A stretch of DNA of 64,000 bases, taken from the IMG/VR virus record IMGVR_UViG_3300042691_042003, positions 124,001 to 188,000 of that record. One strand, written 5' to 3'. A model generated the notes under the pieces. The model was not told where the DNA came from, ran no database searches, and saw only the letters and a program-made list of their open reading frames with translations. A program made the position numbers and the translations under genes. This document shows, in pieces, positions 821 through 63,210 of this stretch (positions are counted from its first letter, which is position 1; each line of letters begins with the position of its first letter).

Positions 821-1117
821 ATGAAAAATACAAAACTTCCTTCTTTCAAAGAATTTAATAAGACTTTTGAAGATGTAAAAGTTGAAGAAGCTATGGGTGT
901 TGCTTCTAAAAAGCTACAAAAGGCAACTGAAGAATTCCATAGTGCTCAATTAGAACTTCAAAAGCTACAAAAACAATTTGTAGGTCTTGCTAAAGATGAT
1001 TCAAAAAGAGAAAGCATGAAACAAAGCATCCTTAATCAGCATAAAATAGTAAAACAAAAGGAAGCAATATTTGCTAAAGCTCTCGGTGATGAAGATATTG
1101 AAGACCTTGAAATCTAA
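821..1117 (+). CDS. Coiled-coil protein with capsid-targeting-like leader
   Basis: N-terminus MKNTKLPSFKEFNKTFE; helical heptad-rich body. Confidence 0.7.
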   Translation: MKNTKLPSFKEFNKTFEDVKVEEAMGVASKKLQKATEEFHSAQLELQKLQKQFVGLAKDDSKRESMKQSILNQHKIVKQKEAIFAKALGDEDIEDLEI

Positions 1118-1121
1118 ATTA

Positions 1122-1604
1122 ATGTGGTTTAATTTTTGGAAATGGCCTAAAGAACTAATTGACGATTATCGTCAATGGTCTGTAGTTAAAGAAGCTTTAC
1201 AAGAAGAAGATACAAAGCAGAAATTCGCAAATTTTAAATATGAAATGCGAATTGATAAAATAGGAAGAATATACACGGTTATTAATGTACCCGATGAACT
1301 TCTTCCTTTCGAATTTCGTAATCAAGTTTGGCCTTGGGTTTTAGATCAATTAAGAGAAATAGATGAACTTCTTCTTTCTTGTAGATTAAATGATTTAGTT
1401 TATCCTGAAGTACAAAAACTTGAAGAATATCCTGCATATTTAGTAGTTCTCACTCCTTCTACCGAATCTTTGGAGTGGGCCAAATTTTTTGGTTGGATTT
1501 TTAATTGTGTATTTACTTCTTCGTTTCTTTTCCTTACAAATAAGATAATTACAAAAACAACAGAAAAGTCTGCTATAGATTTTATTATATCTCTTTTTAA
1601 TTGA
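1122..1604 (+). CDS. Hypothetical membrane-anchored protein
   Basis: ATG 1122 (5 nt after the previous stop) preferred over 1071; hydrophobic C-terminal segment FFGWIFNCVFTSSFLFL. Confidence 0.7.
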   Translation: MWFNFWKWPKELIDDYRQWSVVKEALQEEDTKQKFANFKYEMRIDKIGRIYTVINVPDELLPFEFRNQVWPWVLDQLREIDELLLSCRLNDLVYPEVQKLEEYPAYLVVLTPSTESLEWAKFFGWIFNCVFTSSFLFLTNKIITKTTEKSAIDFIISLFN

Positions 1605-2383
1605 AAACGACAGTTGGAGACCACGGCAAAGGACGTTACTACGTGGTTGATGAAGACAGGAACATTAAGCTCCCTTCCGTAACGACAATACTTACCGAAA
1701 CTTCGGATAAATCAGCATTGGATGCTTGGGTAAAGCGTATAGGACAAGCTGAAGCCGATAAAATATCCACATTTTCTGCAAATCGAGGAACGTTCATGCA
1801 TTCACTTCATGAACATTACCTTTCTGCTAGATTTATTGAAAATCTAGAAAATCCCTTACAAATTTGTTTTAAAAGAGCTATTGAAGAATGCTCTTCTCTT
1901 ACTAAAGAAGAAATGGAAGTAGGGAAAAATCTTTTTCTTAATTTCCATAATAGCTCAGATTTTTATGAAAATGTAAAAGAAATTGCATTTCAAGAAGAAC
2001 CGGTTTGGTCTTTTTTAGGAGGAGGATATGCAGGAAGGTTAGATCTAATGATAAAGAATAAATCAGATGAATTTGTTCTTATAGATTTTAAGACTAGTAG
2101 AAAACCTAAAAAAGAAGATTGGATCGAAGGTTATAAAAAGCAAGTTTCTGCTTATTCTGTAGCTTCTAATGAAGTAAAAGGAATTTTTCCAATAAGATGC
2201 GAAATTTGGATTTCTTGTGAAACTGGAGAAGTACAAAAATTCTCAATAGAACGAGAGGATATAAAAAAATGGTTCTCAAAATTTTATGAAAATGTTCTAA
2301 CATATCATAAAACATTTCCTCAATATAATCATATAATGAATAATGATACCGAAGATAATACATCAAATCTGGGTAGGTCCTAA
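1601..2383 (+). CDS. PD-(D/E)XK exonuclease (Cas4/RecB-like phage nuclease)
   Basis: LPSVTTIL, RGTFMH, YAGRLD, IDFKTS and QVSAY motifs; TTG start. Confidence 0.85.
   Translation: MKTTVGDHGKGRYYVVDEDRNIKLPSVTTILTETSDKSALDAWVKRIGQAEADKISTFSANRGTFMHSLHEHYLSARFIENLENPLQICFKRAIEECSSLTKEEMEVGKNLFLNFHNSSDFYENVKEIAFQEEPVWSFLGGGYAGRLDLMIKNKSDEFVLIDFKTSRKPKKEDWIEGYKKQVSAYSVASNEVKGIFPIRCEIWISCETGEVQKFSIEREDIKKWFSKFYENVLTYHKTFPQYNHIMNNDTEDNTSNLGRS
2309..2337 (+). promoter_or_regulatory. Candidate class II promoter AAAAC-N16-CATATAAT
   Basis: Same bipartite motif and spacing as at 16398, 21176, 29839, 54237 and 56496; ends 5 nt before ATG 2343. Confidence 0.5.
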
Positions 2384-3753: not shown

Positions 3754-4941
3754 ATGGAAAAAATTAATATAAAATTTTTAAATCATTCTTCTTTCTATCT
3801 TGAAAGTGAAGAATATATTGTATTAGTAGATCCTTGGTATTCAGGGAAAATATTCAATAATAGTTGGTCTTTATTAAAAGATACAGAAGATTCTATTATA
3901 GATTATTCTAAGGTTAAATATATTTCGATTTCACATGAGCATCCAGACCATTTGCATTGGCCTACATTAAAAAAGATAAAAGAAAAAACAAAAGAAGTAA
4001 CAATACTTCTTCCTAAAAGAAATAATCCGAACGTTTTAGAAGAATGTATTAAATTAGGATATAAATTTAAGTATTTAGATTATTTTGTAGAAAATAAAAT
4101 AGAAGAAAATTTATCGATATATCCATATCCTCACGGACATGACAGTGCTCTTATTTATGAAATAGAAGATAAAATTATTCTAAATCAAAACGATGCTTAT
4201 TTAGAAGATAACGTAATTTCTACTATTAATGAAAAATTTAAAAAAATAGATCTGTGGTTATTTCAATTTAGTTTAGCAGGATATTACGGAAATCGTACAG
4301 ATCCTAATACTATAATAGAAAATGGAACTAAATTTCATATAGATAAATTTATAAAATATCAAAATGATTTTAAACCTATAATGAGTGTTCCTTTTGCAAG
4401 CTATGTATATTTTTGCAAAGAATATAATAATTATATTAATGATTATGCAGTTAAATTAGAAGATATTCTAGAAAAAACTAATTACATAACTCAAATTCCA
4501 TTTTATAATGAAAATATAGATTTTCATTCAAATACTATGAATAAAAATAATTTAGAAAAATGGAATGAAATATACGAAAATTGCAAAAAAGAAATTAAAA
4601 AAGCAGAACCTTTCCCTGGAGAAGAAATTATAATAGAAGGATTTAAAAAAATATACGATGAAGGATATAGAATTCTTCAAGTAGGTGGCCTTATTTTAGA
4701 ATTTTTTGATTATGATAAGAATCTAGTTATAGATACTTCTAATAATAAGTATTATTTTATTAAAAAAGAAGAAACTCCTAAAGATTGGATAGCCGGAATA
4801 CTTCCAAGTGAAGAACTTTTAGCTTATATTAAGACTCCATGGGGTGCTGATACCTTAAACATAACTGGTACATTTAATAAAATAAACAATGATCTTTGGT
4901 ATATTTTTATGATGTCCAAAGAATTATTATATCAAAGATAA
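3754..4941 (+). CDS. Metallo-beta-lactamase-fold hydrolase (UlaG/CMP-NeuAc hydroxylase-like)
   Basis: NHSSF, VDPWYSG, SHEHPDHL (HxHxDH), HDSAL. Confidence 0.8.
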   Translation: MEKINIKFLNHSSFYLESEEYIVLVDPWYSGKIFNNSWSLLKDTEDSIIDYSKVKYISISHEHPDHLHWPTLKKIKEKTKEVTILLPKRNNPNVLEECIKLGYKFKYLDYFVENKIEENLSIYPYPHGHDSALIYEIEDKIILNQNDAYLEDNVISTINEKFKKIDLWLFQFSLAGYYGNRTDPNTIIENGTKFHIDKFIKYQNDFKPIMSVPFASYVYFCKEYNNYINDYAVKLEDILEKTNYITQIPFYNENIDFHSNTMNKNNLEKWNEIYENCKKEIKKAEPFPGEEIIIEGFKKIYDEGYRILQVGGLILEFFDYDKNLVIDTSNNKYYFIKKEETPKDWIAGILPSEELLAYIKTPWGADTLNITGTFNKINNDLWYIFMMSKELLYQR

Positions 4942-4952
4942 TATTTATTATA

Positions 4953-5681
4953 ATGAGAGAAAGAGACTTTAAAAAAGAGCTAGATTTCTTTTTAGAAAAA
5001 ATAAAAAGAAAAGAACCTTTTGCTTTTGCAAGGTATTCAGATGGAGAATACATGATTATGAATTCTTTAAACATAGATAAAGGCACTCAAGCTTTAGATG
5101 TTGATAAATGGTCATTTAATCTTCAAAATCAAATATTTTCAAAAGACCTTATTAAAACTTTATTTCATACTGAAATAAATTATTTTTATGCTATAGCTTG
5201 TCCTTGTTGTGGATTAGGTGTAGGACTAGCTGAATTTTATAAAAGAAATTTAAAATGCACAGAAGAAGAAATGACTTGGTCTAATCTTTGGATTAATTCT
5301 AATTACGAATCATTTATAAATTTCATAAAAAAATTAGATAGAAAAGTAAATCTATTGGTTAATTATGAAGGAGAAGATAAGGAATATCCATTTGAAGTCG
5401 ATAAATTTTTCAGCATTCCCGATGATTGTGTTAATTGGTATGAAAAAAATAGAGAATGGATTTTACAAAAAATGAAAGAAATTTCTAAAGAAGATGATCA
5501 GATATTTTTTGTTTCTGCCGGTCCTCTTTCTGAAATTTTAATTCATGAAATGTATTTAAATAATCCTAATAATCAATATATAGATACCGGTTCTTCTTTA
5601 GATATATTTGTTAAAGGACGAATAACAAGACCTTATCAAGGAGAAGGATCTAATTTTAAAAATCAAAAATGTTTATGGTAA
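4953..5681 (+). CDS. GT-D fold (DUF1792-like) glycosyltransferase candidate
   Basis: FARYSDGE resembles the GT-D R(F/Y)GDGE motif; SAGP and IDTGS motifs; ATG 4953 preferred over 4896. Confidence 0.6.
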   Translation: MRERDFKKELDFFLEKIKRKEPFAFARYSDGEYMIMNSLNIDKGTQALDVDKWSFNLQNQIFSKDLIKTLFHTEINYFYAIACPCCGLGVGLAEFYKRNLKCTEEEMTWSNLWINSNYESFINFIKKLDRKVNLLVNYEGEDKEYPFEVDKFFSIPDDCVNWYEKNREWILQKMKEISKEDDQIFFVSAGPLSEILIHEMYLNNPNNQYIDTGSSLDIFVKGRITRPYQGEGSNFKNQKCLW

Positions 5682-6385: not shown

Positions 6386-6389
6386 AATT

Positions 6390-9447: not shown

Positions 9448-9451
9448 AATT

Positions 9452-10141: not shown

Positions 10142-10155
10142 AATTTAAATAAATT

Positions 10156-16992: not shown

Positions 16993-17226
16993 ATGTCATT
17001 TAAGAAATTTTTCGAATTTTTGCTAGAAGGCAAGAAAAAAGATTCTAAAGACATAGAGGAAGTATCAGCACCAGAACCAAAAGTTAATGCTGATACTCCT
17101 CTTGCTTGTCCTAAATGCGGATCTTTTAAATTACCTTGTGAATGCTATACAGACGATTATTATAATTCCAAGCTTTCACAGCAAACACCTAGACCCAATA
17201 AAATATTTAAACCAAAAAAGAAATGA
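16993..17226 (+). CDS. Small Cys-containing protein with capsid-targeting-like leader
   Basis: MSFKKFFEFLLE leader; CPKCG...PCEC; GATAAATA at 16970. Confidence 0.65.
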   Translation: MSFKKFFEFLLEGKKKDSKDIEEVSAPEPKVNADTPLACPKCGSFKLPCECYTDDYYNSKLSQQTPRPNKIFKPKKK

Positions 17227-21428: not shown

Positions 21429-21662
21429 ATGATTCGGATGTTTAAAAAAGGGGAGGATATCAATTCTCCCCTTCAAATTGGAGATATCCTCGAAGTAGAA
21501 CCTGGAGTCTTTGTTAAAGTAAAAGAAATTATTAAAGAGACTGAAGAAGACTTTGCTGATATAAAAAAATGGAACATTCGAATAAAAACTGAAGTTATCG
21601 CAAATGACAAGGAATCAACTACCTCAAAATCCAGAAAAGGACAAAGATCTAGAAAAAATTAG
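21429..21662 (+). CDS. Hypothetical protein
   Basis: Operonic 77-aa ORF. Confidence 0.5.
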   Translation: MIRMFKKGEDINSPLQIGDILEVEPGVFVKVKEIIKETEEDFADIKKWNIRIKTEVIANDKESTTSKSRKGQRSRKN

Positions 21663-21867
21663 ATATTATCACGGTACTTGGGATAATTTTTTTAATTATT
21701 GGAAGAAGAGAGGAGTTGAGACGGATCCTTATAAAGGGTCTATTCTAAAACATCCTACTAATAAGAAGCAAAAAGAAAGTACTCTTCCTTATCAGGATTT
21801 TGGCACTTACGATAAATCAAAAAGAAATAAATTAATAGAATCATTTAGCGAATTCTTAGAAAATTAA
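21604..21867 (+). CDS. Hypothetical protein with C-terminal LIESFSEFLE motif
   Basis: 87-aa ORF; the tail resembles the leader motif family. Confidence 0.55.
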   Translation: MTRNQLPQNPEKDKDLEKIRYYHGTWDNFFNYWKKRGVETDPYKGSILKHPTNKKQKESTLPYQDFGTYDKSKRNKLIESFSEFLEN

Positions 21868-23337: not shown

Positions 23338-23539
23338 AAAAGGTTTTGAATATAAAAGAGTTGCCGATTTAGAAGCAGATAAGTTAATTACTATGGGTTG
23401 GGATTTTTGTCCTAAATCTGAATGGAAAATTAACGTAAGAGATTTTGGTAAAGTAAAAGAAGAAACAAATTCTAGCGAGGATAAATATAAAAAGAATAAG
23501 AAGAATCGCAAGAATGAAACCACTTCTGAAGTACAATGA
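23312..23539 (+). CDS. Hypothetical basic protein
   Basis: Operonic ORF; GWDFCPKSEWK. Confidence 0.55.
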   Translation: MKTIKKKTEKGFEYKRVADLEADKLITMGWDFCPKSEWKINVRDFGKVKEETNSSEDKYKKNKKNRKNETTSEVQ

Positions 23540-24803
23540 TTTTGTAAATCTAATATTAGAATCAAAAACCTTAAATGAAGGAGGGGCTTATGGTCATTTA
23601 AATCATCCTTTTGATGATTTAGATCTCACATTTGCCGATCTACAAGAAATGTTAGATGCTACCATTAATGGAGCATTTGGGCCTGAAAATTTTGTTTCTG
23701 AAAAGACGGACGGACAAAATATCATGGTTTCTTGGAAAGGAGGAAGATTAATAGCTGCTCGTAATAAATCACATCTAAAAAATCAAGGAGCTAATGCCCT
23801 TTCGGCCGAGGCATTAGCTCAAATGTTCGCAGGCAGAGGAGAAATCGAGATTGCATTTACTACTGCAATGGATGATCTTTCTTCTGCCATTGCGGCATTT
23901 TCTCCTCAAGATAAAGATCGTTTTTTTGCTGAAGGAAAGAAATTTGCTTCGGTAGAAGTTATTACCCCTAAAACTCAAAATGTCGTTCCTTATGGTTTGA
24001 AAATGCTTGTTTTTCACGGAACAATGGAATATGATGAAGACGGTAACCCCATAGGTGAAGATAAACAAGCTGGAAGAGATTTAGGTAAAATTGTTAATGA
24101 TATTAATGTTGCAGTTCAGAAGAATTTCTTTATAAGAGGTCCTCACGATTTAGAAATAAAACCCCTTCCTAATACTAAAGCTAGAGAAGCTTATTATCGT
24201 AAGAAAATCGATACGGTAATGAAAGAAAGTGGATGCTCACCTTCTTCTACAGTAGGTGATTATGTAATAGGGATGGCTACTAATATTTTTAAAAGAGAAA
24301 CTAATAAAGCAGGAATTACAATCCCTTTTGACGTAGAAACAAAACTTATTAGAAGGATTGCAAGTATAGACGATTCTAAAACATATACAATTTCTCAAAT
24401 TAAAAAAGATTTAGGATCTGATGCTTCTTGGTTTATTGATTTAGAAAAGAAAGACTTTAAGAAAATTCAAAGAGAAATTTATGCTCCTTTAGAAAATATT
24501 TTTCTAGAAATTGGTACCGAAATGATGAAAAATATGTCTTCTTTTCTTTCTGCAAATCCTACACAAGCTGCAGAAGAAATGAAAGCAGAAATTGATCGAG
24601 TTATTTCTTCCATTAGAACTAATGGAGATGCTTCTGATGTTGAAAAGCTAGAACATGAGCTGAATCGTATTGCTACTTCAGGTGGTCTAGAATCAATTGT
24701 TCCTACTGAAGGAATAACATTTTTATTCAAAGGAAAGCTATATAAATACACAGGAATTTTTGCTCCGATCAATCAAATAAGAGGAATGCTTACTTATAGA
24801 TAA
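23514..24803 (+). CDS. DUF6267-like protein with covalent nucleotidyltransferase (ligase-like) motifs
   Basis: LNEGGAYGHLNHPF; EKTDGQN (KxDG, K64); EGITF..KLYKYTG near the C-terminus. Confidence 0.7.
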   Translation: MKPLLKYNDFVNLILESKTLNEGGAYGHLNHPFDDLDLTFADLQEMLDATINGAFGPENFVSEKTDGQNIMVSWKGGRLIAARNKSHLKNQGANALSAEALAQMFAGRGEIEIAFTTAMDDLSSAIAAFSPQDKDRFFAEGKKFASVEVITPKTQNVVPYGLKMLVFHGTMEYDEDGNPIGEDKQAGRDLGKIVNDINVAVQKNFFIRGPHDLEIKPLPNTKAREAYYRKKIDTVMKESGCSPSSTVGDYVIGMATNIFKRETNKAGITIPFDVETKLIRRIASIDDSKTYTISQIKKDLGSDASWFIDLEKKDFKKIQREIYAPLENIFLEIGTEMMKNMSSFLSANPTQAAEEMKAEIDRVISSIRTNGDASDVEKLEHELNRIATSGGLESIVPTEGITFLFKGKLYKYTGIFAPINQIRGMLTYR

Positions 24804-25714: not shown

Positions 25715-25960
25715 ATGAAAACCATAATCCTAATTCTTACATTTTTAACTTTTTCAACTTGTGTCCCTGTTAGATATAACAGAACTTCAAGGGTAGTTGT
25801 ACAACCTACTCCAGTAGTCGTTGTAAATCCACAACCAGCTTTATATTCTCCTTACTATCAATTTAGACCAATTCGTCCTGTAGTAAGACCTCCTTATTTA
25901 GGAAACGTTTATCATAAACCAAAAACCGTAGTAGTTGTTAGAGGTGGTAGAAGAAGATAA
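25715..25960 (+). CDS. Small Pro/Arg-rich putative lipoprotein
   Basis: MKTIILILTFLTFSTC signal with lipobox. Confidence 0.6.
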   Translation: MKTIILILTFLTFSTCVPVRYNRTSRVVVQPTPVVVVNPQPALYSPYYQFRPIRPVVRPPYLGNVYHKPKTVVVVRGGRRR

Positions 25961-25976
25961 TGGTTTCGGTCCTGGA

Positions 25977-26120
25977 ATGATGTTTGGTATACCTGGTCCA
26001 GGTCCTAAAAAAGATACGAAAGGAATTCCTTCTGATAAGAAAAAAGAAGTAGGAACCGAGGTAAAAAATATGAAGTCTAAATTTCTTAAATTTAAGGAAT
26101 TTACTTCTAAAAAAATATAA
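25977..26120 (+). CDS. Small protein with C-terminal KFLKFKEFTSK motif
   Basis: ATG 25977 preferred over TTG 25935; tail resembles T4 IPI KTFKEFTS. Confidence 0.45.
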   Translation: MMFGIPGPGPKKDTKGIPSDKKKEVGTEVKNMKSKFLKFKEFTSKKI

Positions 26121-26124
26121 AAAA

Positions 26125-26646
26125 ATGAGAAAATATATATTTTTCTTTGGGATTATTGGATTAGCTATTTCCCTTATGTCAGCTACTCTTAAAAGAGAAA
26201 GCAGTTATTTCGTTAGCGAAACCGATGAAACTATTTTTAGTGAAGTGGCAGAAATAGTTTATCCTAGAGACGAAGCTTGCAATCTTAAAAATATTAAAAA
26301 ATACGCTAGAATTTTTCTAAATCCTAGATACATTTTAGAATCTTTTGCTTATAAACCATATACAAATTTTGTAGATAAAAGAAGTATAAAGGCAGTTTTT
26401 TCTGTTTATGCTGGGGAAACTTATAGAGTTATAGATTTAAGTGAAGGATTTTCAAAACCAGTAATGGTAAATATTTTTGATTCTGATGGTAAAAAAATAT
26501 ATTCATCTGAAGGTAGTTCTAAAATGTTTGATTTCCTTGCTGAAAATTCAGGTGAATGTACTATTGAATGGATTTATCGAAGAGAGGATTCTCAAAAACC
26601 CGATAAAAAATGTGTAGCTTTTGCTGTAGGATATACAAATGAATAA
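26125..26646 (+). CDS. Secreted hypothetical protein
   Basis: Signal-peptide-like N-terminus and beta-rich body. Confidence 0.65.
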   Translation: MRKYIFFFGIIGLAISLMSATLKRESSYFVSETDETIFSEVAEIVYPRDEACNLKNIKKYARIFLNPRYILESFAYKPYTNFVDKRSIKAVFSVYAGETYRVIDLSEGFSKPVMVNIFDSDGKKIYSSEGSSKMFDFLAENSGECTIEWIYRREDSQKPDKKCVAFAVGYTNE

Positions 26647-27217
26647 TTTACTCACATATGAAGATTTTCTTTTTGAAGATGTAAGAGGAAATAAAGTTTG
26701 TATTTTCCCTGGTAGGTTTCAGCCTTTTCATCTTGGTCATATAGCAGCCTTAGAGAGAACCTCTAAGGTTTTCGGTGCTAAAGTCATTCCTATACAGATC
26801 CTTTCTAAAAGTAATAAATCTCCTATTCCTGATTCAGTTCTTATTAAAATGGGAAATGCAGTTGCTAAAGAATTTCACTTTATAGAAAAGTACATTCTTT
26901 ATCCGCAAGGCCTTATTACGTTTATTCCTGAAATGGTTAAGCTTCTTCAAGAACAAGGTTATTATCCAATTGGTGTAGGTTGTGGATCCGATAGACAAAA
27001 AGATTATGAAAGACAAGTTGCTAAATATATTTTAGCTCCTGATTCAGAAATACAAATTCCTCAATTTGAAGTTGCTATGGTTGACGAAAGAACCGAAGGA
27101 GGACCTTCAGGAACTAAAGTTCGTGAAGCTATTCAAGCTGATGATGAAGAAAAATTTAAAGATCTAACACCTAAATCGATACATTCGTTTTATAAAGAAT
27201 TGAAAAAGTATATATGA
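26639..27217 (+). CDS. HIGH-superfamily (cytidylyltransferase-like) nucleotidyltransferase
   Basis: FPGRFQPFHLGH (HxGH), CGSDRQKDY, SGTKVREAI; leader MNNLLTYEDFLFE. Confidence 0.82.
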   Translation: MNNLLTYEDFLFEDVRGNKVCIFPGRFQPFHLGHIAALERTSKVFGAKVIPIQILSKSNKSPIPDSVLIKMGNAVAKEFHFIEKYILYPQGLITFIPEMVKLLQEQGYYPIGVGCGSDRQKDYERQVAKYILAPDSEIQIPQFEVAMVDERTEGGPSGTKVREAIQADDEEKFKDLTPKSIHSFYKELKKYI

Positions 27218-28695
27218 AACTTCTAAAATTTAAAGATTTCGTAAGTAATTTTACATTTATTAATGAAGCCAGAGTTTGGGCTCATCCTGATAGGACTTAC
27301 GTTTTTAATCCTACCAATCATTCTAAAGTCCCTAATGATATCATTGATTTGACATTTAATTCTTGCTCTTCAGATGATATGCAAGGAGAACATAGTATGT
27401 TTTTTATTTCCGGTGATTCAAGGGTCGTGGAAATCGATCATGAAGAAGCTCTAAAATTATTAAAAAATAAAGATTATTCAATTCTTAGAGATAATGAAGG
27501 AAGGAACGTATTTTTAGTAGTTTCGGAAAGTAAAACAGGAATCTTAACTGAATTAAAAAAATCAAACGAAACTACTACTAACGTTAAAGAAGGTTTAGTA
27601 GTTTATTTCTATTATTCTAATATTCATGAAATTCCTAGTATTCAAAATGCTGAATCAATAATAAAAACTCTTAAAAATTTATCAATACCTTCAGAATCAC
27701 TAGATCCTAAAAGCGTAAGGGAGATTCAAGATTATTTAAACAATTTATTTCTAGATAAAGCTGCTATTAAGTCTTTAACCGATTTTTGGTCTGTAGGATA
27801 TGCTCTTAGTAATATTCTAGATAATAAAAAGCATATAATTTTAAGATCTAATTTATTTAATTCTATTCGTAGATTAGGAAATAAACTAACTAGATTGCCT
27901 GCTGATAAATGGTGTCCAGGCGATATTTATATTACTGATAGAAATTACTTAGGAGTAATTTCTGATTATGTTTCTGAAATAGAAAAAAATATACAAGATG
28001 ATAGCATTGCAAAGCTAAACGATTTATTTTCAGATGAAATGATGATTAATAATGAAAAAGGATCGGCCATAGGTTCTGTTGTTGCTATCTCACTTAAACA
28101 AGAAGAAGCTCAGGCAGGTAAAGCTAAAGAGTTCTTAAAAACTCTTACAAAAGATCAAAAACAATACAACGTTACAAAAGCTGAGTATAAATTGGATGAC
28201 TCTGAAATTGAATCTATGATCGAAGATTTAAGAAAAAAAATAGCTGACGCTTGTTCCAAGTCGGAAATTACAATTAATTTAGAGCAAGACACTAATTATA
28301 AAAACAGCAATCCAATATCCTTAAGGAATAAATTTGCTTCTTTAAAAGTTACTGCAAAGTTATTAGAAAATCCTGCTGAAATAGATGATAATATTCTCAA
28401 AAGCACTGCTTTTGCAATGAGTCTTACAGGAGTTAATCCTACTTTCTTTAAATTTATGGGAAGTTCTAAAGGAAATGCAAAAGTAGATAAATTCCCTAAA
28501 GGAGAAATGATTTATCTTCTCGATCATGGATTAGGAGATAAAAGATCTTCCATCGATATTGTAGATAGGAATTCTAATGCTGAAGTTATGTTTAGATTTA
28601 GGATTAAAAAAGGAGAATATGAAAAGCCTATTATTCTAAAATGCAGGCCTAATGGAGGTGTACAGTCAACTTTAGAAATAGAAAAAATGAAATAA
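27214..28695 (+). CDS. Large protein with leader and a possible PD-(D/E)xK-like core
   Basis: MKLLKFKDF...FINE leader; DKWCPGDIY and VAISLKQ. Confidence 0.6.
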   Translation: MKLLKFKDFVSNFTFINEARVWAHPDRTYVFNPTNHSKVPNDIIDLTFNSCSSDDMQGEHSMFFISGDSRVVEIDHEEALKLLKNKDYSILRDNEGRNVFLVVSESKTGILTELKKSNETTTNVKEGLVVYFYYSNIHEIPSIQNAESIIKTLKNLSIPSESLDPKSVREIQDYLNNLFLDKAAIKSLTDFWSVGYALSNILDNKKHIILRSNLFNSIRRLGNKLTRLPADKWCPGDIYITDRNYLGVISDYVSEIEKNIQDDSIAKLNDLFSDEMMINNEKGSAIGSVVAISLKQEEAQAGKAKEFLKTLTKDQKQYNVTKAEYKLDDSEIESMIEDLRKKIADACSKSEITINLEQDTNYKNSNPISLRNKFASLKVTAKLLENPAEIDDNILKSTAFAMSLTGVNPTFFKFMGSSKGNAKVDKFPKGEMIYLLDHGLGDKRSSIDIVDRNSNAEVMFRFRIKKGEYEKPIILKCRPNGGVQSTLEIEKMK

Positions 28696-28999: not shown

Positions 29000-29428
29000 A
29001 TGAAAATAAATACTTTCGAACAATTTTTGAATGAATCTGCAGTTAGATTTACTTCAAATCCTTCACACGCTCAGCTAGCAGCTGATGGCCTTTCTCTACT
29101 CGATCAAATTCGTGTTTGGCATTGGCAAGTAACTATTGGAGACCTTCATAAAGCTCTTGGAGATTTTTATGATGAATTTTCTGGATTAAACGATACCCTA
29201 GTTGAAGCAGTTATGGGTAAGTACGGTAGATTCAGTATTAAAGGAACTAAATCACAAATCCTTGTTGATTACGATGTAGCTACTTTTGATTCTGCAATTG
29301 CTAATTACGAATCTCTTTACACAAATGATTATCGTAAGCTTTTTACTTCTGATCCTGAAATCTGCAATATTCTTGACGAAATCGTAGCAGAAATGCAGAA
29401 GCTTAAGTACCTTTCAACAATGTCTTAA
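29000..29428 (+). CDS. Ferritin/Dps-like four-helix protein (DUF5856-like) with leader
   Basis: HWQ...HKALGDFYD...D.LVEAVMGKYGR; L.NILDEI...KLKYL; leader MKINTFEQFLNE. Confidence 0.75.
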   Translation: MKINTFEQFLNESAVRFTSNPSHAQLAADGLSLLDQIRVWHWQVTIGDLHKALGDFYDEFSGLNDTLVEAVMGKYGRFSIKGTKSQILVDYDVATFDSAIANYESLYTNDYRKLFTSDPEICNILDEIVAEMQKLKYLSTMS

Positions 29429-55371: not shown

Positions 55372-55420
55372 CTTTTCCGTGAAGCCACACGTTCTAAACG
55401 TGTTTTAATTTGATCAACAG

Positions 55421-55444
55421 AGGACTCCTACTAGGGGTCCTTTT
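55421..55444 (+). terminator. Intrinsic terminator
   Basis: AGGACTCC-TACTA-GGGGTCCT followed by TTT. Confidence 0.7.
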
Positions 55445-55450
55445 GTTGTC

Positions 55451-56407: not shown

Positions 56408-56495
56408 TCGAAGAACCTCTGGTAAAACCGAGCCCTCCGCGAAAGTGCGGTCGAGAAAAATCCCCCGTACTCGAAGCATTAGTGCGAATCGTAGG

Positions 56496-56524
56496 AAAAC
56501 CGGTAGGTGACGAATACATATAAT
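56496..56524 (+). promoter_or_regulatory. Candidate class II promoter AAAAC-N16-CATATAAT
   Basis: Repeated motif before ATG 56547. Confidence 0.45.
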
Positions 56525-56918: not shown

Positions 56919-57238
56919 AACTCGTAGAGAGGCTAAATGAATTCATGGCCGATGGATCTAAATTTCAAATGGCCTCACAGGCTAATAAAACCTGGAAATC
57001 TGTTTGGAAAATTGATATCCCTTTCGAAGGTCAAAAAAGATTTATTACTATAGAAGGAGGAATAACCGATGTAATGCCTAATTATCATCAAGCCGTAATC
57101 AACGTTCTTGTTCGTCAGATTAATGTAGAAGGAGGAGCTGAAGATGTCTCTTCTGAACAAATCACTGTTTGGGAGAAGAATTTTGTTGATAGAGACGAAG
57201 CTATCGATGAGGTTAAAAAAATGAGAAATCAATTTTGA
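56915..57238 (+). CDS. Hypothetical protein
   Basis: MKLVERLNEF leader; operonic. Confidence 0.6.
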   Translation: MKLVERLNEFMADGSKFQMASQANKTWKSVWKIDIPFEGQKRFITIEGGITDVMPNYHQAVINVLVRQINVEGGAEDVSSEQITVWEKNFVDRDEAIDEVKKMRNQF

Positions 57239-57882
57239 AACTTGTAGAATCGTTTGAAGCTTTTAAAGGAGGGACCGTTTGTCTTTCAGCCAATCTCGTT
57301 CCTCATGAAAGATTTCATCTTTGTGATTGGTGGAGAATTGGTAATTGTGATTGGTGGTGGTGGTCTCGTCGGAACACTCCTAATCTTGCTATAGATTCAA
57401 TATCAGATATAGATGAAGAGCTGAGAGGAATTGTCTCTTCTCTTTGGAGAAATCGAATACCGACTACTCCTTCTTGTTCAGGACATTCAGATTTTGGAGA
57501 TCGTCGCGATTCTATTCATTCTTCTATTATTCAAACAATGAGATCTTCTCCTCTTCGATGTTACCGAGGAGGAACTCATATAGATATAGATTCAATTGAA
57601 GATCTTGATCCTGATTGGTACGATCGAATTGTTGACTATCAACGTCGAGGTGTTCTCGGTTGGAAGAAACAAGGTTGGGAGGATTCAATAGATTGGCCTT
57701 CTCAAACAATGTCAGATCGAGGTTGCTTCTTTCTTCTTACCGAGACTTCTGAAGAGTGGAAAAGACTCGAAGAGATTATCAAGTCTAAACTAAACGAAGA
57801 GAATCCAGGTTATCCTGGTCAGGCTGCACCTCTCTCTACACAGTTACATTTACAGATAGCACCACCATCTATTGTCTTATAA
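57235..57882 (+). CDS. Hypothetical protein with TxxSCSGH motif
   Basis: TTG start; MKLVESFEAF leader; LWRNRIPTTPSCSGH. Confidence 0.55.
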   Translation: MKLVESFEAFKGGTVCLSANLVPHERFHLCDWWRIGNCDWWWWSRRNTPNLAIDSISDIDEELRGIVSSLWRNRIPTTPSCSGHSDFGDRRDSIHSSIIQTMRSSPLRCYRGGTHIDIDSIEDLDPDWYDRIVDYQRRGVLGWKKQGWEDSIDWPSQTMSDRGCFFLLTETSEEWKRLEEIIKSKLNEENPGYPGQAAPLSTQLHLQIAPPSIVL

Positions 57883-57958: not shown

Positions 57959-59554
57959 ATGAAAAAACTCTTTTTAATTCTGCTCACGGTTGCCAGTTTT
58001 CTGTCAATCTCTCCTGCTCAAGCTGTTGATTGGGCAGTTGTTTGTGTAAAGCAAGGCCCTGCTAGAGGTTATGTTGCTGGCAATCTCAGACCTGGTCATA
58101 TTGCTAAACCTCTTCGTATGCTCGATCCTTTAGCAACGACTATTCCTTCTGTTGCCGGTAATGGATATCCTGTTCCTCCTCGTTCTCTTCCACAAAGAGC
58201 TCTTGTTGCTGAACAATCCGATATTTCAGGTGATATGAATTTCTTCGCTCTCGGATTTGGTGGTCAAATCGTAATGAGATCTTCCGAATGGATTATGAAT
58301 GGTCCTGGAACCGACTTTACTGTATTTGAAACTACATGGGGTGATCCTTCTTGTCGTCCTTCAAATTCCGAACAAGCTCTTATTGAGATTTCCGAAGATG
58401 GTGTTAATTGGATGACTCCTGGTTCTTTAAGTACAGGTCTTGGAGGTGCTTATAACTCTTGTTATAATGGTTCATTCGATATCACACCTCTTATGAAGAT
58501 TCAATTTATACGTATTACTGATCGTACTAATCCTGATTGGAGAGTTCAAGGTGATGGCAATGATGGTTATGATGTAGATGGTATCGTTGTAAATTATTCT
58601 CTTCCACCTACTGCATTTTCTGCTCCACAATCACCTATATGTGATTATCAGCAAGGAGTTGCTTCTCAATATGTAGGTGCTGCAGGAAATTTCCCTGGTC
58701 GTGGAATTGTTTCGACTCGTAAGAATTTCTCTAAAGCTAATATTAATGAAGATGGATTCCCCACTGCTGCAATGACTAATCCTGGTCTTCGTGATTCCGG
58801 TCCTGCTAGTGGATCTTATAATTTCTTCTCTCTCGGTTTTGGTGGTTGGGCTTGTCTTCAACTTCCTTATACTGTGTTTAATGGTCCTGGTCCTGAATTC
58901 TATTCATTCGAAACGACTTGGAATAATCAGCCTTGTCCTAATTATCCAGAAAGAGCTAATGTTTCGGTTTCGGTTGATGGAACAAATTGGTCTTCAACTG
59001 TACTAATTTGTAAAGATGCTCTTGGTATTGTTGGAACCTCTTCAGCTATTGATTTATCTTCATTCGGACCTGAATTCTCTATGGTTAATTTTATTCGTTT
59101 TCAAGAAGCATCTAATCCTGCTGATTTTGGTGGAGGTGCTGATGGTTATGATATGGATAATATTGTTATTTCTCAGCTACCACCTCCTACTCCAAGTGCT
59201 ACACCAACTGGATTTTCTTGTGAAACGATTACCTCAAATCGTATTGCTATCGTAGAAGGTCAAAACACTTATATGGATGGTGGAATTCCTGAAGAGATGT
59301 TTCCTCTCGAAATCGTAGGAGGAAATGTAGTTACTGATAAGCTTTCTTTCTTTGCAACTATCGCTGAAGAAGGAACCTATCATTACACTGTAAGAAGCTA
59401 TCAAGGAACTTTTGTTTCTGAAGGTCTTCTTCAAGGATCTCTTTTCGAAACACCTACTACAGAAGTTGATGTTAGGAATTTTAGTAATGGAGTTTACTTC
59501 TTAACTCTCTCTTCTAATACAACTAAAGAAACCGTTAAGTTCGTAAAGAACTAA
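57959..59554 (+). CDS. Secreted protein with two repeated domains and a T9SS type-A C-terminal sorting domain
   Basis: Signal peptide; FFALGFGG/FFSLGFGG, FETTW and ADGYD/DGYDVDG repeats; C-terminus VDVRNFSNGVYFLTL...TVKFVKN. Confidence 0.8.
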   Translation: MKKLFLILLTVASFLSISPAQAVDWAVVCVKQGPARGYVAGNLRPGHIAKPLRMLDPLATTIPSVAGNGYPVPPRSLPQRALVAEQSDISGDMNFFALGFGGQIVMRSSEWIMNGPGTDFTVFETTWGDPSCRPSNSEQALIEISEDGVNWMTPGSLSTGLGGAYNSCYNGSFDITPLMKIQFIRITDRTNPDWRVQGDGNDGYDVDGIVVNYSLPPTAFSAPQSPICDYQQGVASQYVGAAGNFPGRGIVSTRKNFSKANINEDGFPTAAMTNPGLRDSGPASGSYNFFSLGFGGWACLQLPYTVFNGPGPEFYSFETTWNNQPCPNYPERANVSVSVDGTNWSSTVLICKDALGIVGTSSAIDLSSFGPEFSMVNFIRFQEASNPADFGGGADGYDMDNIVISQLPPPTPSATPTGFSCETITSNRIAIVEGQNTYMDGGIPEEMFPLEIVGGNVVTDKLSFFATIAEEGTYHYTVRSYQGTFVSEGLLQGSLFETPTTEVDVRNFSNGVYFLTLSSNTTKETVKFVKN

Positions 59555-59654: not shown

Positions 59655-59912
59655 ATGAAAAATCTATTTACTTACGAAGAATTTTTAAACGAAGGGTCTA
59701 CTAAGGTTGATGGAATCAATATAATTGATACCAAATACGTAGTAGCTCATAATTTCAAAAAACCCAGTGGAAAGGGCGTTTGGAAATGGTCTTTTTATTC
59801 AGACGGAGGAGATTCAGTAAAGACTCCTATTATGGATTATGAAAAGGCTAAAAAATGGGCAGCTGATTGGGCTAAGTTTAAAAAAGAACCTTGGGTTTAT
59901 TTATTACCTTAA
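59655..59912 (+). CDS. Small protein with capsid-targeting-like leader
   Basis: MKNLFTYEEFLNE; GATAAATA at 59614. Confidence 0.7.
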   Translation: MKNLFTYEEFLNEGSTKVDGINIIDTKYVVAHNFKKPSGKGVWKWSFYSDGGDSVKTPIMDYEKAKKWAADWAKFKKEPWVYLLP

Positions 59913-60904: not shown

Positions 60905-61102
60905 ATGAAATTTTACACATATCGAGAATTTTTAAGAGAAACAGCATATAAAGAAGGAAGTAGAAAACCTACGGCTGAAGAAAGAAAAATGTGTAAATCA
61001 CCTGAAGGATTTAATCAGATAAATCATTGTAAAGCTTTAGGACTTATTCCTAGAGCAGATGGAACTAAAAAAGTAAGTGCTAAATACGGAGGAGATGAGT
61101 AA
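60905..61102 (+). CDS. Small protein with capsid-targeting-like leader
   Basis: MKFYTYREFLRE; CKSPEGFNQINHC. Confidence 0.65.
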   Translation: MKFYTYREFLRETAYKEGSRKPTAEERKMCKSPEGFNQINHCKALGLIPRADGTKKVSAKYGGDE

Positions 61103-61823
61103 TGAAAAAGATATACAAAGACTAGAAGATTCTTTAAGAGGAAAAAAGGTCTTACTAATAACGACCTCAAATCGTTGGTCAGGACATGATGAAAAACCTA
61201 AATCGTCTAGACTTGCTGAAGATCTGGCTAGTAGAATAGGTGCTACAATAATCGATGCTTCAAAATTGAAGATTTATCCTTGCGAAGGAAATGTTTCTAC
61301 CGTTAACGGAAATAATTGCGGAACCGTAGATTCGGTTTTAAAAGATAAGACGAAGAATCCTACAGGTCATCATCGTTGCTGGGTTAATATTAATAATCCT
61401 GACGACGAACTTTGGAAAATAAGCAAAGAGATATTTGAAGCTGATTCGGTTATATTTTTCGCTTCAGTGAGATGGGGTCAAACCAATTCTATATATCAGA
61501 AACTAATTGAACGCTTGAATTGGCTAGAGAATCGCTGGGCAACTTTGAATGAGAGTAATATATTATCTAATAAGGAGGCAGGCATTGTCCTAGTTGGCCA
61601 CAATTGGAACGGAGTAGCTGTTTTAGAAACACAAAAGCAGGTTCTACAATTTTATGGATTTAAAGTTCCTACCGAGCTATCGTTTAATTGGCAATGGACT
61701 ACCGATCCTTTTGATGAATCCGAAGAAGGATATATTCAAGATCCTAAAGATTTTAAAGAAGATTTCGATCTTGGATCTAATGCATTGAAAGAATCATTCA
61801 AAAACTTCTTTAAAAGACAATGA
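61095..61823 (+). CDS. Flavodoxin-fold NAD(P)H-dependent FMN reductase / iron-sulfur flavoprotein-like protein
   Basis: TTSNR...SSRLA, CEGNVS..C..C, ADSVIF..SVRWG..S.YQKLIERL; ATG 61095 preferred over GTG 61077. Confidence 0.75.
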   Translation: MSNEKDIQRLEDSLRGKKVLLITTSNRWSGHDEKPKSSRLAEDLASRIGATIIDASKLKIYPCEGNVSTVNGNNCGTVDSVLKDKTKNPTGHHRCWVNINNPDDELWKISKEIFEADSVIFFASVRWGQTNSIYQKLIERLNWLENRWATLNESNILSNKEAGIVLVGHNWNGVAVLETQKQVLQFYGFKVPTELSFNWQWTTDPFDESEEGYIQDPKDFKEDFDLGSNALKESFKNFFKRQ

Positions 61824-62617
61824 AAAACTTAAAAACTTACGATAGCTGGTTAAACGAATCAACAGTTAATCCTATTGTTGAGGATCTACTTACTCGAGCA
61901 GAACCTACTATTCAACAGATGGTTAATAAATCTAGAGAGGCTTATGTAAAACAATACGAGCGTGAATGGACTAAATACGATGAAACGATTACTAGATTAA
62001 TCATAATCTCTAATATGGTTCGATCTTTTGAAATTTACACGAAACATAATGATAGACTCGTTAACTTTACAGTAAAAGGATCTCCAAAAGGATCTATGGT
62101 TATCTCTTCACAAATTGATAGAGATGATGTACCTCATTATTTAGATACTGAGGTAATTTATGCAGGAGGTTATAATATACAGGCTCTTCATTATCGTTAT
62201 ATTACGAAAACTAATCTAACTAAAACTGGAGCTGATACTAAAACCAAAGAGATAGGAGAAAAAATCAAGAAGCTTTCTAAACTAGAAAAGATCAATAAAG
62301 AAATCGAAGGTTATCAAGTCAGAATAAAGGATAATGAAGAGAATATTGCTAAAAATTCGGTTTTATCTGACGAAGAAATAAAGGATATTCTTCGAAAGGG
62401 AGAGTATGGTAGTACTATTGATACTACATGGGAGGATGTTGTTCGGAACAAAGGACATTACGATAGCAGAGAAGAATTTGAAACTTCTCAAAAGCAATAC
62501 ATCGCTGATAAGATAGTATTTTGGAAAAGGGTAAATATTGAATGGAAAATTGAGAATAATACAGCTCTCAAAAAGAATATTGACAAATTAAATAAGAAGT
62601 TAGAGACACTAATATGA
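61820..62617 (+). CDS. Coiled-coil protein with capsid-targeting-like leader
   Basis: MKNLKTYDSWLNES; GGYNIQALHYRY. Confidence 0.7.
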   Translation: MKNLKTYDSWLNESTVNPIVEDLLTRAEPTIQQMVNKSREAYVKQYEREWTKYDETITRLIIISNMVRSFEIYTKHNDRLVNFTVKGSPKGSMVISSQIDRDDVPHYLDTEVIYAGGYNIQALHYRYITKTNLTKTGADTKTKEIGEKIKKLSKLEKINKEIEGYQVRIKDNEENIAKNSVLSDEEIKDILRKGEYGSTIDTTWEDVVRNKGHYDSREEFETSQKQYIADKIVFWKRVNIEWKIENNTALKKNIDKLNKKLETLI

Positions 62618-63210
62618 AAAATTTAAAAACCTACGATAGCTGGTTGAATGAATCTTCAGGAGATTTACTTAAACCGAGAAGAGGAAAACCTTTACATTTC
62701 GATCATCGTAGATATCCAGAGCTAGCAGGTGAGCTATTCAATCTTATTACTATTGCATATTCGGAAATAGGAGGTCATGCTAAAATAAAATCTCCAGAAG
62801 ATATATTCTCTGATCCTGATTGGAATTTCTGGGAAGGTACTGATATTCACGGATCTCAAGATTTTGATATTGTCATATTTGGACAGAAGACTAAATTTGG
62901 TGTTAAATTTTCCGGGGTAGGACATGATGGAGCAAAAGATTCTAAGAAAGAGTATCTAGACGATCTAGGATCAGATCTTAAGAATTTAGGTTATTACATC
63001 GAATCTTCTGGAAAATTTGCTGAGATTCTTATGAATAAGTACGGATGTCCTGTTATAGAAGACGAAGAAACTGTTGTTAAAGTTCTTGGTAAACAAGTTC
63101 AATGGATAGGTAAATCTTCAAATCCAGAACATACAGGTAATGGATGGTACATACGTAATATTGGAGGACATCCTCATGAAAAGATTTTAATAGGTCGACC
63201 AAAAAGTTAA
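62614..63210 (+). CDS. Hypothetical protein with an identical leader
   Basis: MKNLKTYDSWLNES; Y..IGGH, GVGHDG. Confidence 0.7.
   Translation: MKNLKTYDSWLNESSGDLLKPRRGKPLHFDHRRYPELAGELFNLITIAYSEIGGHAKIKSPEDIFSDPDWNFWEGTDIHGSQDFDIVIFGQKTKFGVKFSGVGHDGAKDSKKEYLDDLGSDLKNLGYYIESSGKFAEILMNKYGCPVIEDEETVVKVLGKQVQWIGKSSNPEHTGNGWYIRNIGGHPHEKILIGRPKS

What the first reader, a model, noticed from the sequence alone, without database searches (positions are those of the whole stretch)
821..63210. Family of T4 capsid-targeting-sequence-like leaders marks a predicted set of packaged, co-injected proteins
Seen: unrelated ORFs begin with the same short motif. Examples: MKNTKLPSFKEF (821), MSFKKFFEFLLE (16993), MKPLLKYNDF...LNE (23514), MNNLLTYEDFLFE (26639), MKLLKFKDF...INE (27214), MKINTFEQFLNE (29000), MKLVESFEAF (57235), MKNLFTYEEFLNE (59655), MKFYTYREFLRE (60905), MKNLKTYDSWLNE (61820 and 62614). 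C-terminal copies occur in 21604 (LIESFSEFLE), 25977 (KFLKFKEFTS) and 61095 (LKESFKNFF). Known: T4 internal proteins carry MKTYQEFIAE (IPII/IPIII) or MKTFKEFTS (IPI), which directs them into the prohead and is cut after Glu by gp21; IPI* is an injected anti-restriction protein. Inference: this phage tags at least ten cargoes, several of them enzymes, for head packaging and injection. That would be a much larger delivered toolkit than in T4, and the C-terminal placement would be an unusual variant.
Basis: partly seen in the sequence, partly recalled or inferred. Interest (0 to 1): 0.85.

Follow-up and report, generated by a model that had tools for sequence, protein, structure and literature searches.

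The report
T4-type capsid-targeting leaders, uncultured jumbo phage
A 246-kb uncultured T4-like phage puts almost the same short N-terminal "address tag" that phage T4 uses to load proteins into its head onto many unrelated proteins, so its probable packaged and co-injected proteins can be predicted from sequence; actual packaging is untested.

Summary
A pattern taken in advance from T4 mutational data ([YF]..[FW][ILV].E, which covers IPIII residues 4, 7, 8 and 10) hits 7 N-termini in the window. It hits once in 19,323 internal positions (expected 0.06, P about 4e-13). Three more ORFs (23514, 27214, weakly 821) carry an IPI-like extended form.

The 57235 example and the three "C-terminal copies" do not hold up.

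The window is part of IMGVR_UViG_3300042691_042003. That contig also carries gp4, gp2, a T4-type portal, a Peptidase_S77 (gp21) protease with the catalytic His and Ser, and a gp23-type capsid gene. Five more tagged genes lie directly upstream of that cluster.

In 26 related head-module loci the tag is about 35-fold enriched at N-termini. It sits on 25 unrelated protein families.

In 117 homologues of the 23514 protein the extension varies from 14 to 46 aa. It still ends in [LIV]-x-E just before the conserved domain in 115 of them.

Best reading: these are T4-type capsid-targeting propeptides, a known mechanism found in a distant clade and on a larger scale. Packaging, cleavage and injection are inferred, not shown.

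The parts
16993..17226 (+). 77-aa ORF with a strict CTS-like leader, MSFKKFFEFLLE|G. The predicted mature part is 7.3 kDa with pI 9.1, so it is IP-like, small and basic.
26639..27217 (+). 192-aa HxGH nucleotidyltransferase (PPAT/NMNAT-like) with a strict leader, MNNLLTYEDFLFE|D. The catalytic domain starts at residue 19, against residue 3 in solved PPAT.
29000..29428 (+). 142-aa DUF5856 protein (same PHROG as T4 rI.-1) with a strict leader, MKINTFEQFLNE|S.
59655..59912 (+). 85-aa ORF with a strict leader, MKNLFTYEEFLNE|G. The mature part is 8.3 kDa with pI 9.5.
60905..61102 (+). 65-aa ORF with a strict leader, MKFYTYREFLRE|T. The mature part is 5.8 kDa with pI 9.3.
61820..62617 (+). 265-aa ORF with a strict leader, MKNLKTYDSWLNE|S. 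It has a distant homologue in Tenacibaculum phage pT24.
62614..63210 (+). 198-aa ORF with the same 14-aa leader as 61820. The two leaders differ by 5 synonymous and 0 non-synonymous changes, and the rest of the two proteins is unrelated.
23514..24803 (+). 429-aa DUF6267-type protein with an invariant KxDG motif (possibly ligase-like). It has an extended, IPI-like leader with predicted cleavage sites at ILE-17 and LNE-22, just before the conserved GGAYGH.
27214..28695 (+). 493-aa protein of unknown function with an extended leader, MKLLKFKDFVSNFTFINE|A. Distant homologues lie beside terminase, portal and protease genes in other T4-like contigs.
821..1117 (+). 98-aa ORF and a weak candidate. It has SFKEF at residues 8-12 and only a loose V-x-E site near residue 23.
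57235..57882 (+). It has a TTG start, no [ILV]xE site and an atypical ORF sequence.
21604..21867 (+). Has a C-terminal look-alike (..ESFSEFLEN) that does not fit the strict pattern. Not supported as a tag.
25935..26120 (+). Ends in ..MKSKFLKFKEFTSKKI, which resembles the start of T4 IPI. It may be a relic or chance. Not supported as a C-terminal tag.
61077..61823 (+). Has a C-terminal look-alike (..ESFKNFFKRQ). Not supported as a tag.

Best explanation
The leaders are T4-type capsid-targeting propeptides. A 12-13 residue N-terminal peptide has the consensus M-K-N-L-x-[TS]-[YF]-x-[ED]-[FW]-[LIV]-x-E. A longer IPI-like version also occurs. The peptide is predicted to dock the newly made protein onto the scaffolding core of the assembling prohead. 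After the shell closes, the phage's gp21-family serine protease is predicted to cut after the Glu. The mature protein would then stay inside the head and leave with the DNA at infection.

Shown here:
- the motif, its strict N-terminal position and its statistics;
- its identity with the T4 CTS at the four functionally mapped positions;
- its presence on unrelated proteins;
- the gp21-type protease, portal and gp23-type capsid genes on the same contig, with a cluster of tagged genes directly upstream of them;
- a conserved [LIV]-x-E junction before the conserved domain in one cargo family.

Inferred: docking to the core, cleavage, retention in the head and injection.
For: 1. Motif and statistics. 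There are 7 N-terminal matches against 1 internal match to a pattern fixed in advance from T4 data (P 4.5e-13). The same pattern finds T4 IPII and IPIII, and finds nothing at pT24 N-termini.

2. Agreement with T4 genetics. In the T4 CTS, residues 4 and 7 mainly carry targeting, and residues 8 and 10 carry processing (PMC9026906). These are the invariant positions here. One relative starts MKSYQEFVNE, against T4's MKTYQEFIAE.

3. Selection acts on the protein. The leaders of 61820 and 62614 differ by 5 synonymous and 0 non-synonymous changes, and the two proteins are otherwise unrelated.

4. Same contig. It carries gp4, gp2, Portal_T4, Peptidase_S77 and Gp23 genes. The protease scores 46.6 bits against a Pfam cut-off of 27 and matches T4 gp21 structure 5JBL. 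It keeps H85 and S140, and keeps an LxxE-9 motif like T4's LLIE-9. The capsid propeptide keeps KW.P[IL][IL]E, as in gp23.

5. Five tagged genes lie directly upstream of that head cluster.

6. Across 26 related head-module loci there are 101 N-terminal hits in 4,785 positions, against 69 in 114,039 internal positions. The 72 unique tagged proteins fall into 25 unrelated mature families.

7. A scan of a public viral-contig collection for TY[ED][ED]F[LF]NE gave 49 matches. Thirty-one have the ORF's first Met within 8 residues upstream, usually exactly 5.

8. In 117 homologues of the 23514 protein the extension is 14-46 aa long. P1 is E in 115 and P3 is L, I or V in 115, directly before the conserved GGAYGH. 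The AlphaFold model shows a short helix at residues 7-16, then a low-confidence linker at 17-28 that holds the predicted site.

9. In 26639 the leader is an add-on that solved homologues lack.

10. The protease carries a long acidic C-terminal extension with 5.5-6 [LIV]xE per 100 aa, against 1.6 for the window's proteins. This is what a cleavable scaffold would look like.
Against: - No virion proteome, cleavage data or expression timing exists for this uncultured phage.
- The tagged genes inside the window lie among metabolic and accessory genes, not in the head module.
- No gp22 homologue was detected by sequence, so the docking partner is unidentified.
- The T4 late-promoter octamer is not enriched (13 found, 15.9 expected).
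- Mature parts are not uniformly basic as T4 IPs are; their pI ranges from 4.5 to 9.5.
- Two cargoes are large (45 and 54 kDa), although T4 Alt is larger.
- Some tagged proteins could be core components that are degraded rather than delivered.
Confidence: 0.66

Rival explanations
1. The leaders are real protease-recognised propeptides, but most tagged proteins are prohead core or scaffold accessories. These would be degraded or expelled during maturation, or would stay in the head without any role in the next host. There would then be no large injected 'toolkit'.
For: T4 gp67, gp68 and gp22 are core proteins that gp21 cuts into fragments (PMC5694885). Several head-module tagged proteins are acidic or low-complexity. 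Some have second LNE or LxE sites just after the first.
Against: Folded, enzyme-like cargoes have a single junction site directly before the conserved domain. That suggests release of an intact mature protein, as with the T4 IPs and Alt. Small basic mature proteins resemble T4 IPs.
Confidence: 0.17
2. The N-terminal motif serves something unrelated to the capsid. Candidates are a translation-initiation or mRNA feature of AT-rich genes, a degron, or a docking helix for another phage complex.
For: The motif is built from residues with AT-rich codons. The tagged genes in the window are not next to head genes. Expression timing is unknown.
Against: Codons vary while the residues stay fixed. AT-rich pT24 has no such N-termini. 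The motif matches T4's experimentally mapped CTS position for position. Tagged genes cluster at the head module across 26 loci. The [LIV]xE junction is conserved even though the linker length varies.
Confidence: 0.1
3. The similarity is a chance or compositional artefact of lysine- and phenylalanine-rich N-termini.
For: The genome is only about 31% G+C, and loose versions of the motif do occur internally.
Against: P is about 4e-13 with a pattern fixed in advance. Shuffled N-termini give a mean of 0.03 hits. The pattern replicates in 26 related loci and in a collection-wide scan.
Confidence: 0.01

Closest known systems
[quoted passage not shown]
   Same: A short N-terminal peptide directly after Met. 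Aromatic residues sit at the positions equivalent to 4 and 7, with [ILV] at 8 and Glu at 10. The residue after the Glu is usually small or polar. The tag sits on unrelated, often small basic proteins. The genome has a gp21-family protease. An extended form resembles IPI (MKTFKEFTS...ITE).
   Different: Two or three extra residues lie between Met-Lys and the Thr/Ser-Tyr/Phe. Many more tagged genes are predicted: 9-10 in this window plus at least 5 at the head module, against 3 IPs plus Alt in T4. The cargoes include enzyme-like proteins. The phage is a 246-kb uncultured freshwater phage whose nearest cultured relative infects a flavobacterium. Nothing has been tested experimentally.
Variable internal-protein loci of T-even phages with CTS-like leaders (Repoila et al. 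1994, as cited in PMC9026906 and PMC3012670)
   Same: Diverse, fast-evolving proteins share only the leader. They are interpreted as injected counter-defence proteins.
   Different: Those are close relatives of T4 in enterobacteria. Here the same code appears in a very distant branch of the T4 superfamily, where capsid and protease are recognisable only at Pfam level.
Long propeptides of phiKZ, 201phi2-1 and SPN3US head and ejection proteins (PMC5694885)
   Same: N-terminal propeptides are removed after Glu by a related prohead protease, and are proposed to target proteins into the head.
   Different: Those propeptides are mostly 80-160 residues long with S/A/G at P3. Here they are 12-22 residues long with L/I/V at P3, which is the T4 style.
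Encapsulin cargo-loading peptides (established knowledge, not tested here)
   Same: A short terminal peptide directs unrelated cargo into an HK97-fold shell.
   Different: They are usually C-terminal, are not cleaved, and involve no injection. The C-terminal look-alikes in this window are not supported.

Membership tests
T4-type capsid targeting sequence (CTS) | Located at the extreme N-terminus, starting within a few residues of Met | tested here: met
   All strict matches start at residue 6 or 7. In the collection-wide scan the Met is usually exactly 5 residues upstream of the TY.
T4-type capsid targeting sequence (CTS) | Residues equivalent to IPIII Tyr4 and Phe7 (targeting) and Ile8 and Glu10 (processing) | tested here: met
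   Seven window ORFs match [YF]..[FW][ILV].E. The positions come from PMC9026906. ORFs 23514 and 27214 keep positions 4, 7 and 8 but have the Glu site further downstream, as in IPI. ORF 821 keeps only the aromatic pair.
T4-type capsid targeting sequence (CTS) | Same leader on otherwise unrelated mature proteins | tested here: met
   61820 and 62614 share only their first 15 residues. There are 25 unrelated mature families among 72 unique tagged proteins.
T4-type capsid targeting sequence (CTS) | Genome encodes a gp21-family (Peptidase S77) prohead protease that cuts after [LI]-x-E | tested here: met
   Peptidase_S77 on the same contig, scoring 46.6 bits against a cut-off of 27. It matches 5JBL, and H85 and S140 are conserved. 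Its cleavage specificity was not assayed.
T4-type capsid targeting sequence (CTS) | A scaffolding core (gp22-like) that the leader binds | tested here: inconclusive
   No sequence match to T4 gp22. Candidates by composition are the protease's acidic C-terminal extension and a 519-aa protein, both with 5-6 [LIV]xE per 100 aa.
T4-type capsid targeting sequence (CTS) | Tagged protein is present when proheads assemble (late expression) | tested here: inconclusive
   Five tagged genes are embedded in the head module. The window's tagged genes are not. The T4 late-promoter octamer is not enriched.
T4-type capsid targeting sequence (CTS) | Protein is incorporated into the head and the leader is removed after Glu | not testable with these tools
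   Needs virion mass spectrometry or a reporter-fusion assay. Indirect support: P1 is E in 115 of 117 homologues and P3 is L, I or V in 115 of 117 homologues, just before the conserved domain of the 23514 family.
T4-type capsid targeting sequence (CTS) | Mature protein is injected with the DNA | not testable with these tools
phiKZ-type long head-protein propeptides | Propeptide of roughly 80-160 residues ending in [SAG]-x-E | tested here: not met
   The leaders are 12-22 residues in this phage and 14-46 in the 23514 family, and P3 is L, I or V. Reference values come from PMC5694885.
T4 superfamily (phage lineage) | T4-type portal, gp23-type capsid protein, gp2, gp4 and baseplate genes | tested here: met
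   PF07230, PF07068, PF26869 and PF12322 are on the same contig. A gp4 homologue is 40% identical to T4's.

The most novel reading that the evidence does not exclude
The T4 capsid-targeting code may be conserved almost letter for letter across very distant branches of the T4 superfamily. If so, it works as a sequence-readable address label. Reading it in uncultured jumbo phages predicts a co-injected protein set of 15 or more proteins per phage, and at least 25 families across this clade. The set includes enzymes: an HxGH nucleotidyltransferase, a KxDG ligase-like protein that is fused to such a transferase in other phages, an ATP-grasp enzyme and a HAD-type hydrolase. These would be delivered ready-made to act before any phage gene is expressed, for example against host defences that deplete nucleotides or cut RNA.
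Probability: 0.35. Interest if true: 0.8.

Novelty: new member of a known kind. Interest (0 to 1): 0.58.

Why it matters
Proteins that a phage injects with its DNA act first in an infection. In T4 they include known counter-defence proteins: IPI* acts against GmrSD, and IPIII is needed on strain ECOR17 (PMC3012670; bioRxiv 10.1101/2022.04.14.488369). Such proteins are hard to find without virion proteomics, and that is impossible for uncultured phages.

If this leader is a true CTS, a simple N-terminal motif scan gives a candidate list of delivered proteins for a widespread environmental clade. The 23514 family alone has 1,197 database relatives.

The finding would also show that the T4 targeting code has been kept across a very large evolutionary distance. 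It would further suggest that the well-developed T4 protein-packaging tools could carry over to phages of other bacterial phyla.

Tried and rejected
- Megablast of 48 kb of the window against GenBank phages found nothing.
- Three attempts to reach the head genes of the window's contig through the pT24 portal failed. I tried a single sequence, a homologue search that I cut off too strictly at 1e-60, and an 8-sequence alignment. The route that worked was a DNA pattern for the leader. It hit a second place on the same contig, next to gp4.
- The T4 late-promoter octamer TATAAATA is not enriched, so nothing can be said about timing.
- There are no tRNA genes and no Rfam matches in the window.
- Literature searches for the leader peptides themselves, and for CTS-like leaders outside the T-even and phiKZ groups, found nothing. 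The library is incomplete, so this is weak evidence of novelty.
- The function of the 27214 protein is unresolved. It has no Pfam, PHROG, NCBIfam or PDB match, only faint restriction-enzyme-like features.
- The RNA-ligase-like reading of the 23514 protein rests on an invariant KxDG and on weak Foldseek hits to T4 Rnl1 (E 0.02-0.3). It is only a lead.
- The C-terminal copies are rejected as a tag. Simple read-through into the next gene is excluded for 21604 and 25935, because the reading frames differ.


Full report
**What is in the window**

The window is AT-rich, about 31% G+C, with a 21-26% island at 4-16 kb. It is densely packed with plus-strand ORFs. It corresponds to about 124,001-188,000 of the 246,081-bp contig IMGVR_UViG_3300042691_042003.

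Gene tables for the contig's flanks show a T4 baseplate-assembly domain, topoisomerase, PhoH and a sigma factor. The only annotated phage with any protein match is Tenacibaculum phage pT24. This is a 235-kb T4-like phage with a gp23-type capsid protein, a T4 portal and a Peptidase_S77 protease. The host of the window's phage is not established. A sub-threshold type-IX-secretion sorting domain and the pT24 link point to Bacteroidota.

**Checking the observation**

To avoid tuning a pattern on the data, I took one from T4 genetics. In the IPIII leader MKTYQEFIAE, residues 4 and 7 mainly carry targeting, and residues 8 and 10 carry processing (PMC9026906). I confirmed the leader sequence itself from the T4 record and from bioRxiv 10.1101/2021.01.19.427310.

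The resulting pattern, [YF]..[FW][ILV].E, gives:
- 7 matches within the first 11 start positions of the window's 103 ORFs (16993, 26639, 29000, 59655, 60905, 61820, 62614);
- 1 match in 19,323 internal positions, where 0.06 N-terminal matches would be expected (P 4.5e-13);
- IPII and IPIII in 100 kb of T4, as a positive control;
- no N-terminal match in pT24, which is just as AT-rich.

Shuffled N-termini give 0.03 hits on average. An all-against-all comparison of N-termini, made without any pattern, recovers the same family.

ORFs 23514 and 27214 carry an extended form. It has the aromatic pair and a hydrophobic residue, with the [ILV]-x-E site 5-12 residues further on. T4 IPI is built the same way (MKTFKEFTS...ITE). 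ORF 821 is a weak case.

ORF 57235 fails: it has a TTG start and no Glu site. None of the three C-terminal look-alikes meets the strict pattern. They are only marginally enriched under a pattern chosen after the fact (4 hits against 0.84 expected). I do not accept them as tags.

**Protein-level selection and modularity**

The adjacent genes 61820 and 62614 encode the same first 14 residues. Their DNA differs at five synonymous sites and at no non-synonymous site. Beyond residue 15 the two proteins are unrelated. Codon choice for Thr, Leu, Tyr and Phe varies among the leaders. Selection therefore acts on the peptide, not on an RNA or DNA element, and the peptide is portable.

**The decisive context lies elsewhere on the same contig**

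I scanned the public viral-contig collection for DNA that could encode TY[ED][ED]F[LF]NE. It gave 49 matches. In 31 of them the ORF's first Met lies within 8 residues upstream, usually exactly 5. This shows that the leader is widespread and strictly N-terminal.

One match lay on the window's own contig, outside the window. It sits in a tandem run of tagged genes next to a homologue of T4 head-completion protein gp4. The gene table around it reads gp4, gp2 (PF26869), portal (PF07230), Peptidase_S77 (PF03420, 614 aa), then gp23-type capsid protein (PF07068). I fetched this segment as L075, contig positions 69,034-89,510.

What L075 shows:
- **Protease.** It exceeds the Pfam threshold (46.6 bits against 27) and matches the T4 gp21 crystal structure 5JBL. 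It keeps the residues equivalent to gp21 His85 and Ser140. The crystallised T4 protein carries Ala at both positions, which fits their being the catalytic pair.
- **N-terminal motifs.** The protease keeps an N-terminal L-x-x-E at residue 9, like T4's LLIE-9. The capsid propeptide keeps KW.P[IL][IL]E, as in gp23.
- **A scaffold-like extension.** The protease has a long acidic C-terminal extension with 5.5-6 [LIV]-x-E motifs per 100 residues, against 1.6 for the window's proteins. That is what a cleavable scaffold would look like. No gp22 homologue is detectable by sequence.
- **Tagged genes.** Five tagged genes (262, 150, 305, 271 and 131 aa) lie directly upstream of gp4. An ATP-grasp enzyme and an 83-aa protein downstream of the capsid gene have extended or variant leaders.

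**Comparative support**

Using gp4 as an anchor returned 26 head-module loci of one clade. For these I allowed Tyr as well at the second aromatic position. The pattern then hits 101 times in 4,785 N-terminal positions and 69 times in 114,039 internal positions, about 35-fold enrichment. Most loci have 2 to 6 tagged genes, and two short or distant loci have none. One relative starts MKSYQEFVNE, almost the T4 sequence.

The mature parts of the 72 unique tagged proteins (window plus these loci) fall into 25 families with no detectable similarity to one another.

Homologues of the 27214 protein in other T4-like contigs sit beside terminase, portal and protease genes. They carry other leaders that also end in L-x-E-Ala. 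pT24 has its own N-terminal family of the type [ILVM]-x-x-Y-[LIV]-x-E, with 7 found against 0.75 expected under a post hoc pattern. The code therefore seems to drift between lineages while keeping the hydrophobic-x-Glu ending.

**A cleavage-site signature in one cargo family**

The 23514 protein has 1,197 database relatives, all uncultured. In 117 of the 120 best, the conserved domain starts at GGAYGH. The extension before it varies from 14 to 46 residues and varies in sequence. The residue just before the domain is Glu in 115 of 117, and the residue two before that is Leu, Ile or Val in 115 of 117. In 112 of 117 an aromatic pair lies within the first 14 residues.

An AlphaFold model built from 27 homologues has mean pLDDT 79. 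It shows a short helix at residues 7-16, a low-confidence linker at 17-28 that contains the predicted site, and then the folded body. This is what a removable targeting propeptide should look like.

**What the cargoes are**

- **26639** is an HxGH nucleotidyltransferase of the PPAT/NMNAT type. Its first strand aligns to residue 3 of solved enzymes but lies at residue 19 here, so the leader is an add-on.
- **23514** is of the DUF6267 type by language-model similarity. It has an invariant K-x-D-G motif and weak structural resemblance to T4 RNA ligase 1. In other phages this module is fused to a cytidylyltransferase-like domain, which links it functionally to 26639. The ligase reading is only a lead.
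- **29000** belongs to DUF5856 and to the same PHROG as T4 rI.-1.
- **16993, 59655 and 60905** would give 6-8 kDa mature proteins with pI 9.1-9.5, much like the T4 IPs.
- **27214, 61820 and 62614** are of unknown function.

**Interpretation**

The most economical explanation is that these are T4-type capsid-targeting propeptides. The sequence-level membership criteria are met: position, the four mapped residues, portability and a gp21-type protease in the same genome. The physical criteria could not be tested: incorporation, cleavage and injection. The docking partner is unidentified.

The main rival keeps the protease link but doubts delivery. On that view some tagged proteins may be core components that are destroyed. 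Readings unrelated to the capsid, and chance, are poorly supported.

**Novelty**

The CTS and its use by T-even phages to load diverse internal proteins are published (PMC3012670, PMC9026906). A review already suggests it may be a general device of T4-like phages (PMC9026906).

What is new here:
- the code is nearly unchanged in a very distant, uncultured, probably Bacteroidota-infecting clade;
- the scale, with about 9-10 candidates in this window and at least 14-17 in the 84.5 kb of the contig examined;
- the enzyme-like nature of some cargoes.

I found no paper reporting these leaders, but the searchable library is incomplete. I file the finding as a new member of a known kind, of moderate to good interest. 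Its main value is as a way to predict delivered proteins of uncultured phages.

Noticed in passing
window 4000-16000 (e.g. 13499-14731): A low-GC island (21-26% G+C against about 31% elsewhere) is packed with glycosyltransferase, methyltransferase and oxidoreductase genes. It includes a RuBisCO-large-chain-like ORF (PF00016, E 1e-32). It looks like a sugar or surface-modification gene block with an unusual RuBisCO-like enzyme.
   Followed up: no
window 55400-56500: An ORF-poor stretch of about 1.1 kb holds three or four imperfect direct repeats of a ~34-nt unit (CACTTTAGTACACTAC...TAGTAGTG, 55511-55712) and a palindrome at 55656-55677. There is no tRNA and no Rfam match. It is iteron-like, so possibly an origin or a regulatory region.
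   Followed up: partly
window 17510-18694: The thymidylate synthase is 394 aa long and its Pfam match is split into two stretches. This implies an insertion of roughly 100 residues.
   Followed up: no
window 30190-31629: A TROVE/Ro-like protein (DUF2828 plus DUF7788; phrog_850 'RNA-binding protein', E 3e-148).
   Followed up: no
window 43296-51431 and 57959-59554: A 778-aa secreted protein with a YDG domain is followed by three tandem ~600-aa paralogue-like ORFs with no family match. A 531-aa protein has sub-threshold F5/8-type-C and type-IX-secretion sorting domains, which hints at a Bacteroidota host.
   Followed up: no
L005-L010 (Tenacibaculum phage pT24, NC_049383): pT24 lacks the window's leader. 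It has its own N-terminal family, for example M..ISEYLEEKINE and MRDI.HYIKEELE, with 7 N-terminal matches against 0.75 expected. This cultured phage could be used to test the idea by virion proteomics.
   Followed up: partly
L075:12924-14768 (same contig, outside the window): The S77 protease is 614 aa long. Its acidic C-terminal extension carries repeats such as GIEYTKHIAE and IIEYTEYLKE, which themselves resemble the leader motif. It may be a fused scaffold whose self-association motif the leaders imitate.
   Followed up: partly
L075:18723-20198; L017:13490-14107 and L020:16378-16995: Leader-like N-termini also occur on an ATP-grasp enzyme (same contig) and on HAD-type hydrolases (MKLIIESWNKFLVE|A) in other T4-like contigs.
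   Followed up: no
window 36503-38526: This is the only sizeable minus-strand block. It holds a 488-aa protein with a concanavalin-like (Laminin_G_3) domain that matches a phage virion structural family, and a 186-aa partner.
   Followed up: no
window 25935-26120: The ORF ends in MKSKFLKFKEFTSKKI followed by a stop. The stretch KFKEFTS is nearly the start of T4 IPI (TFKEFTS). It may be the relic of a leader whose gene body was replaced, or it may be chance.
   Followed up: partly
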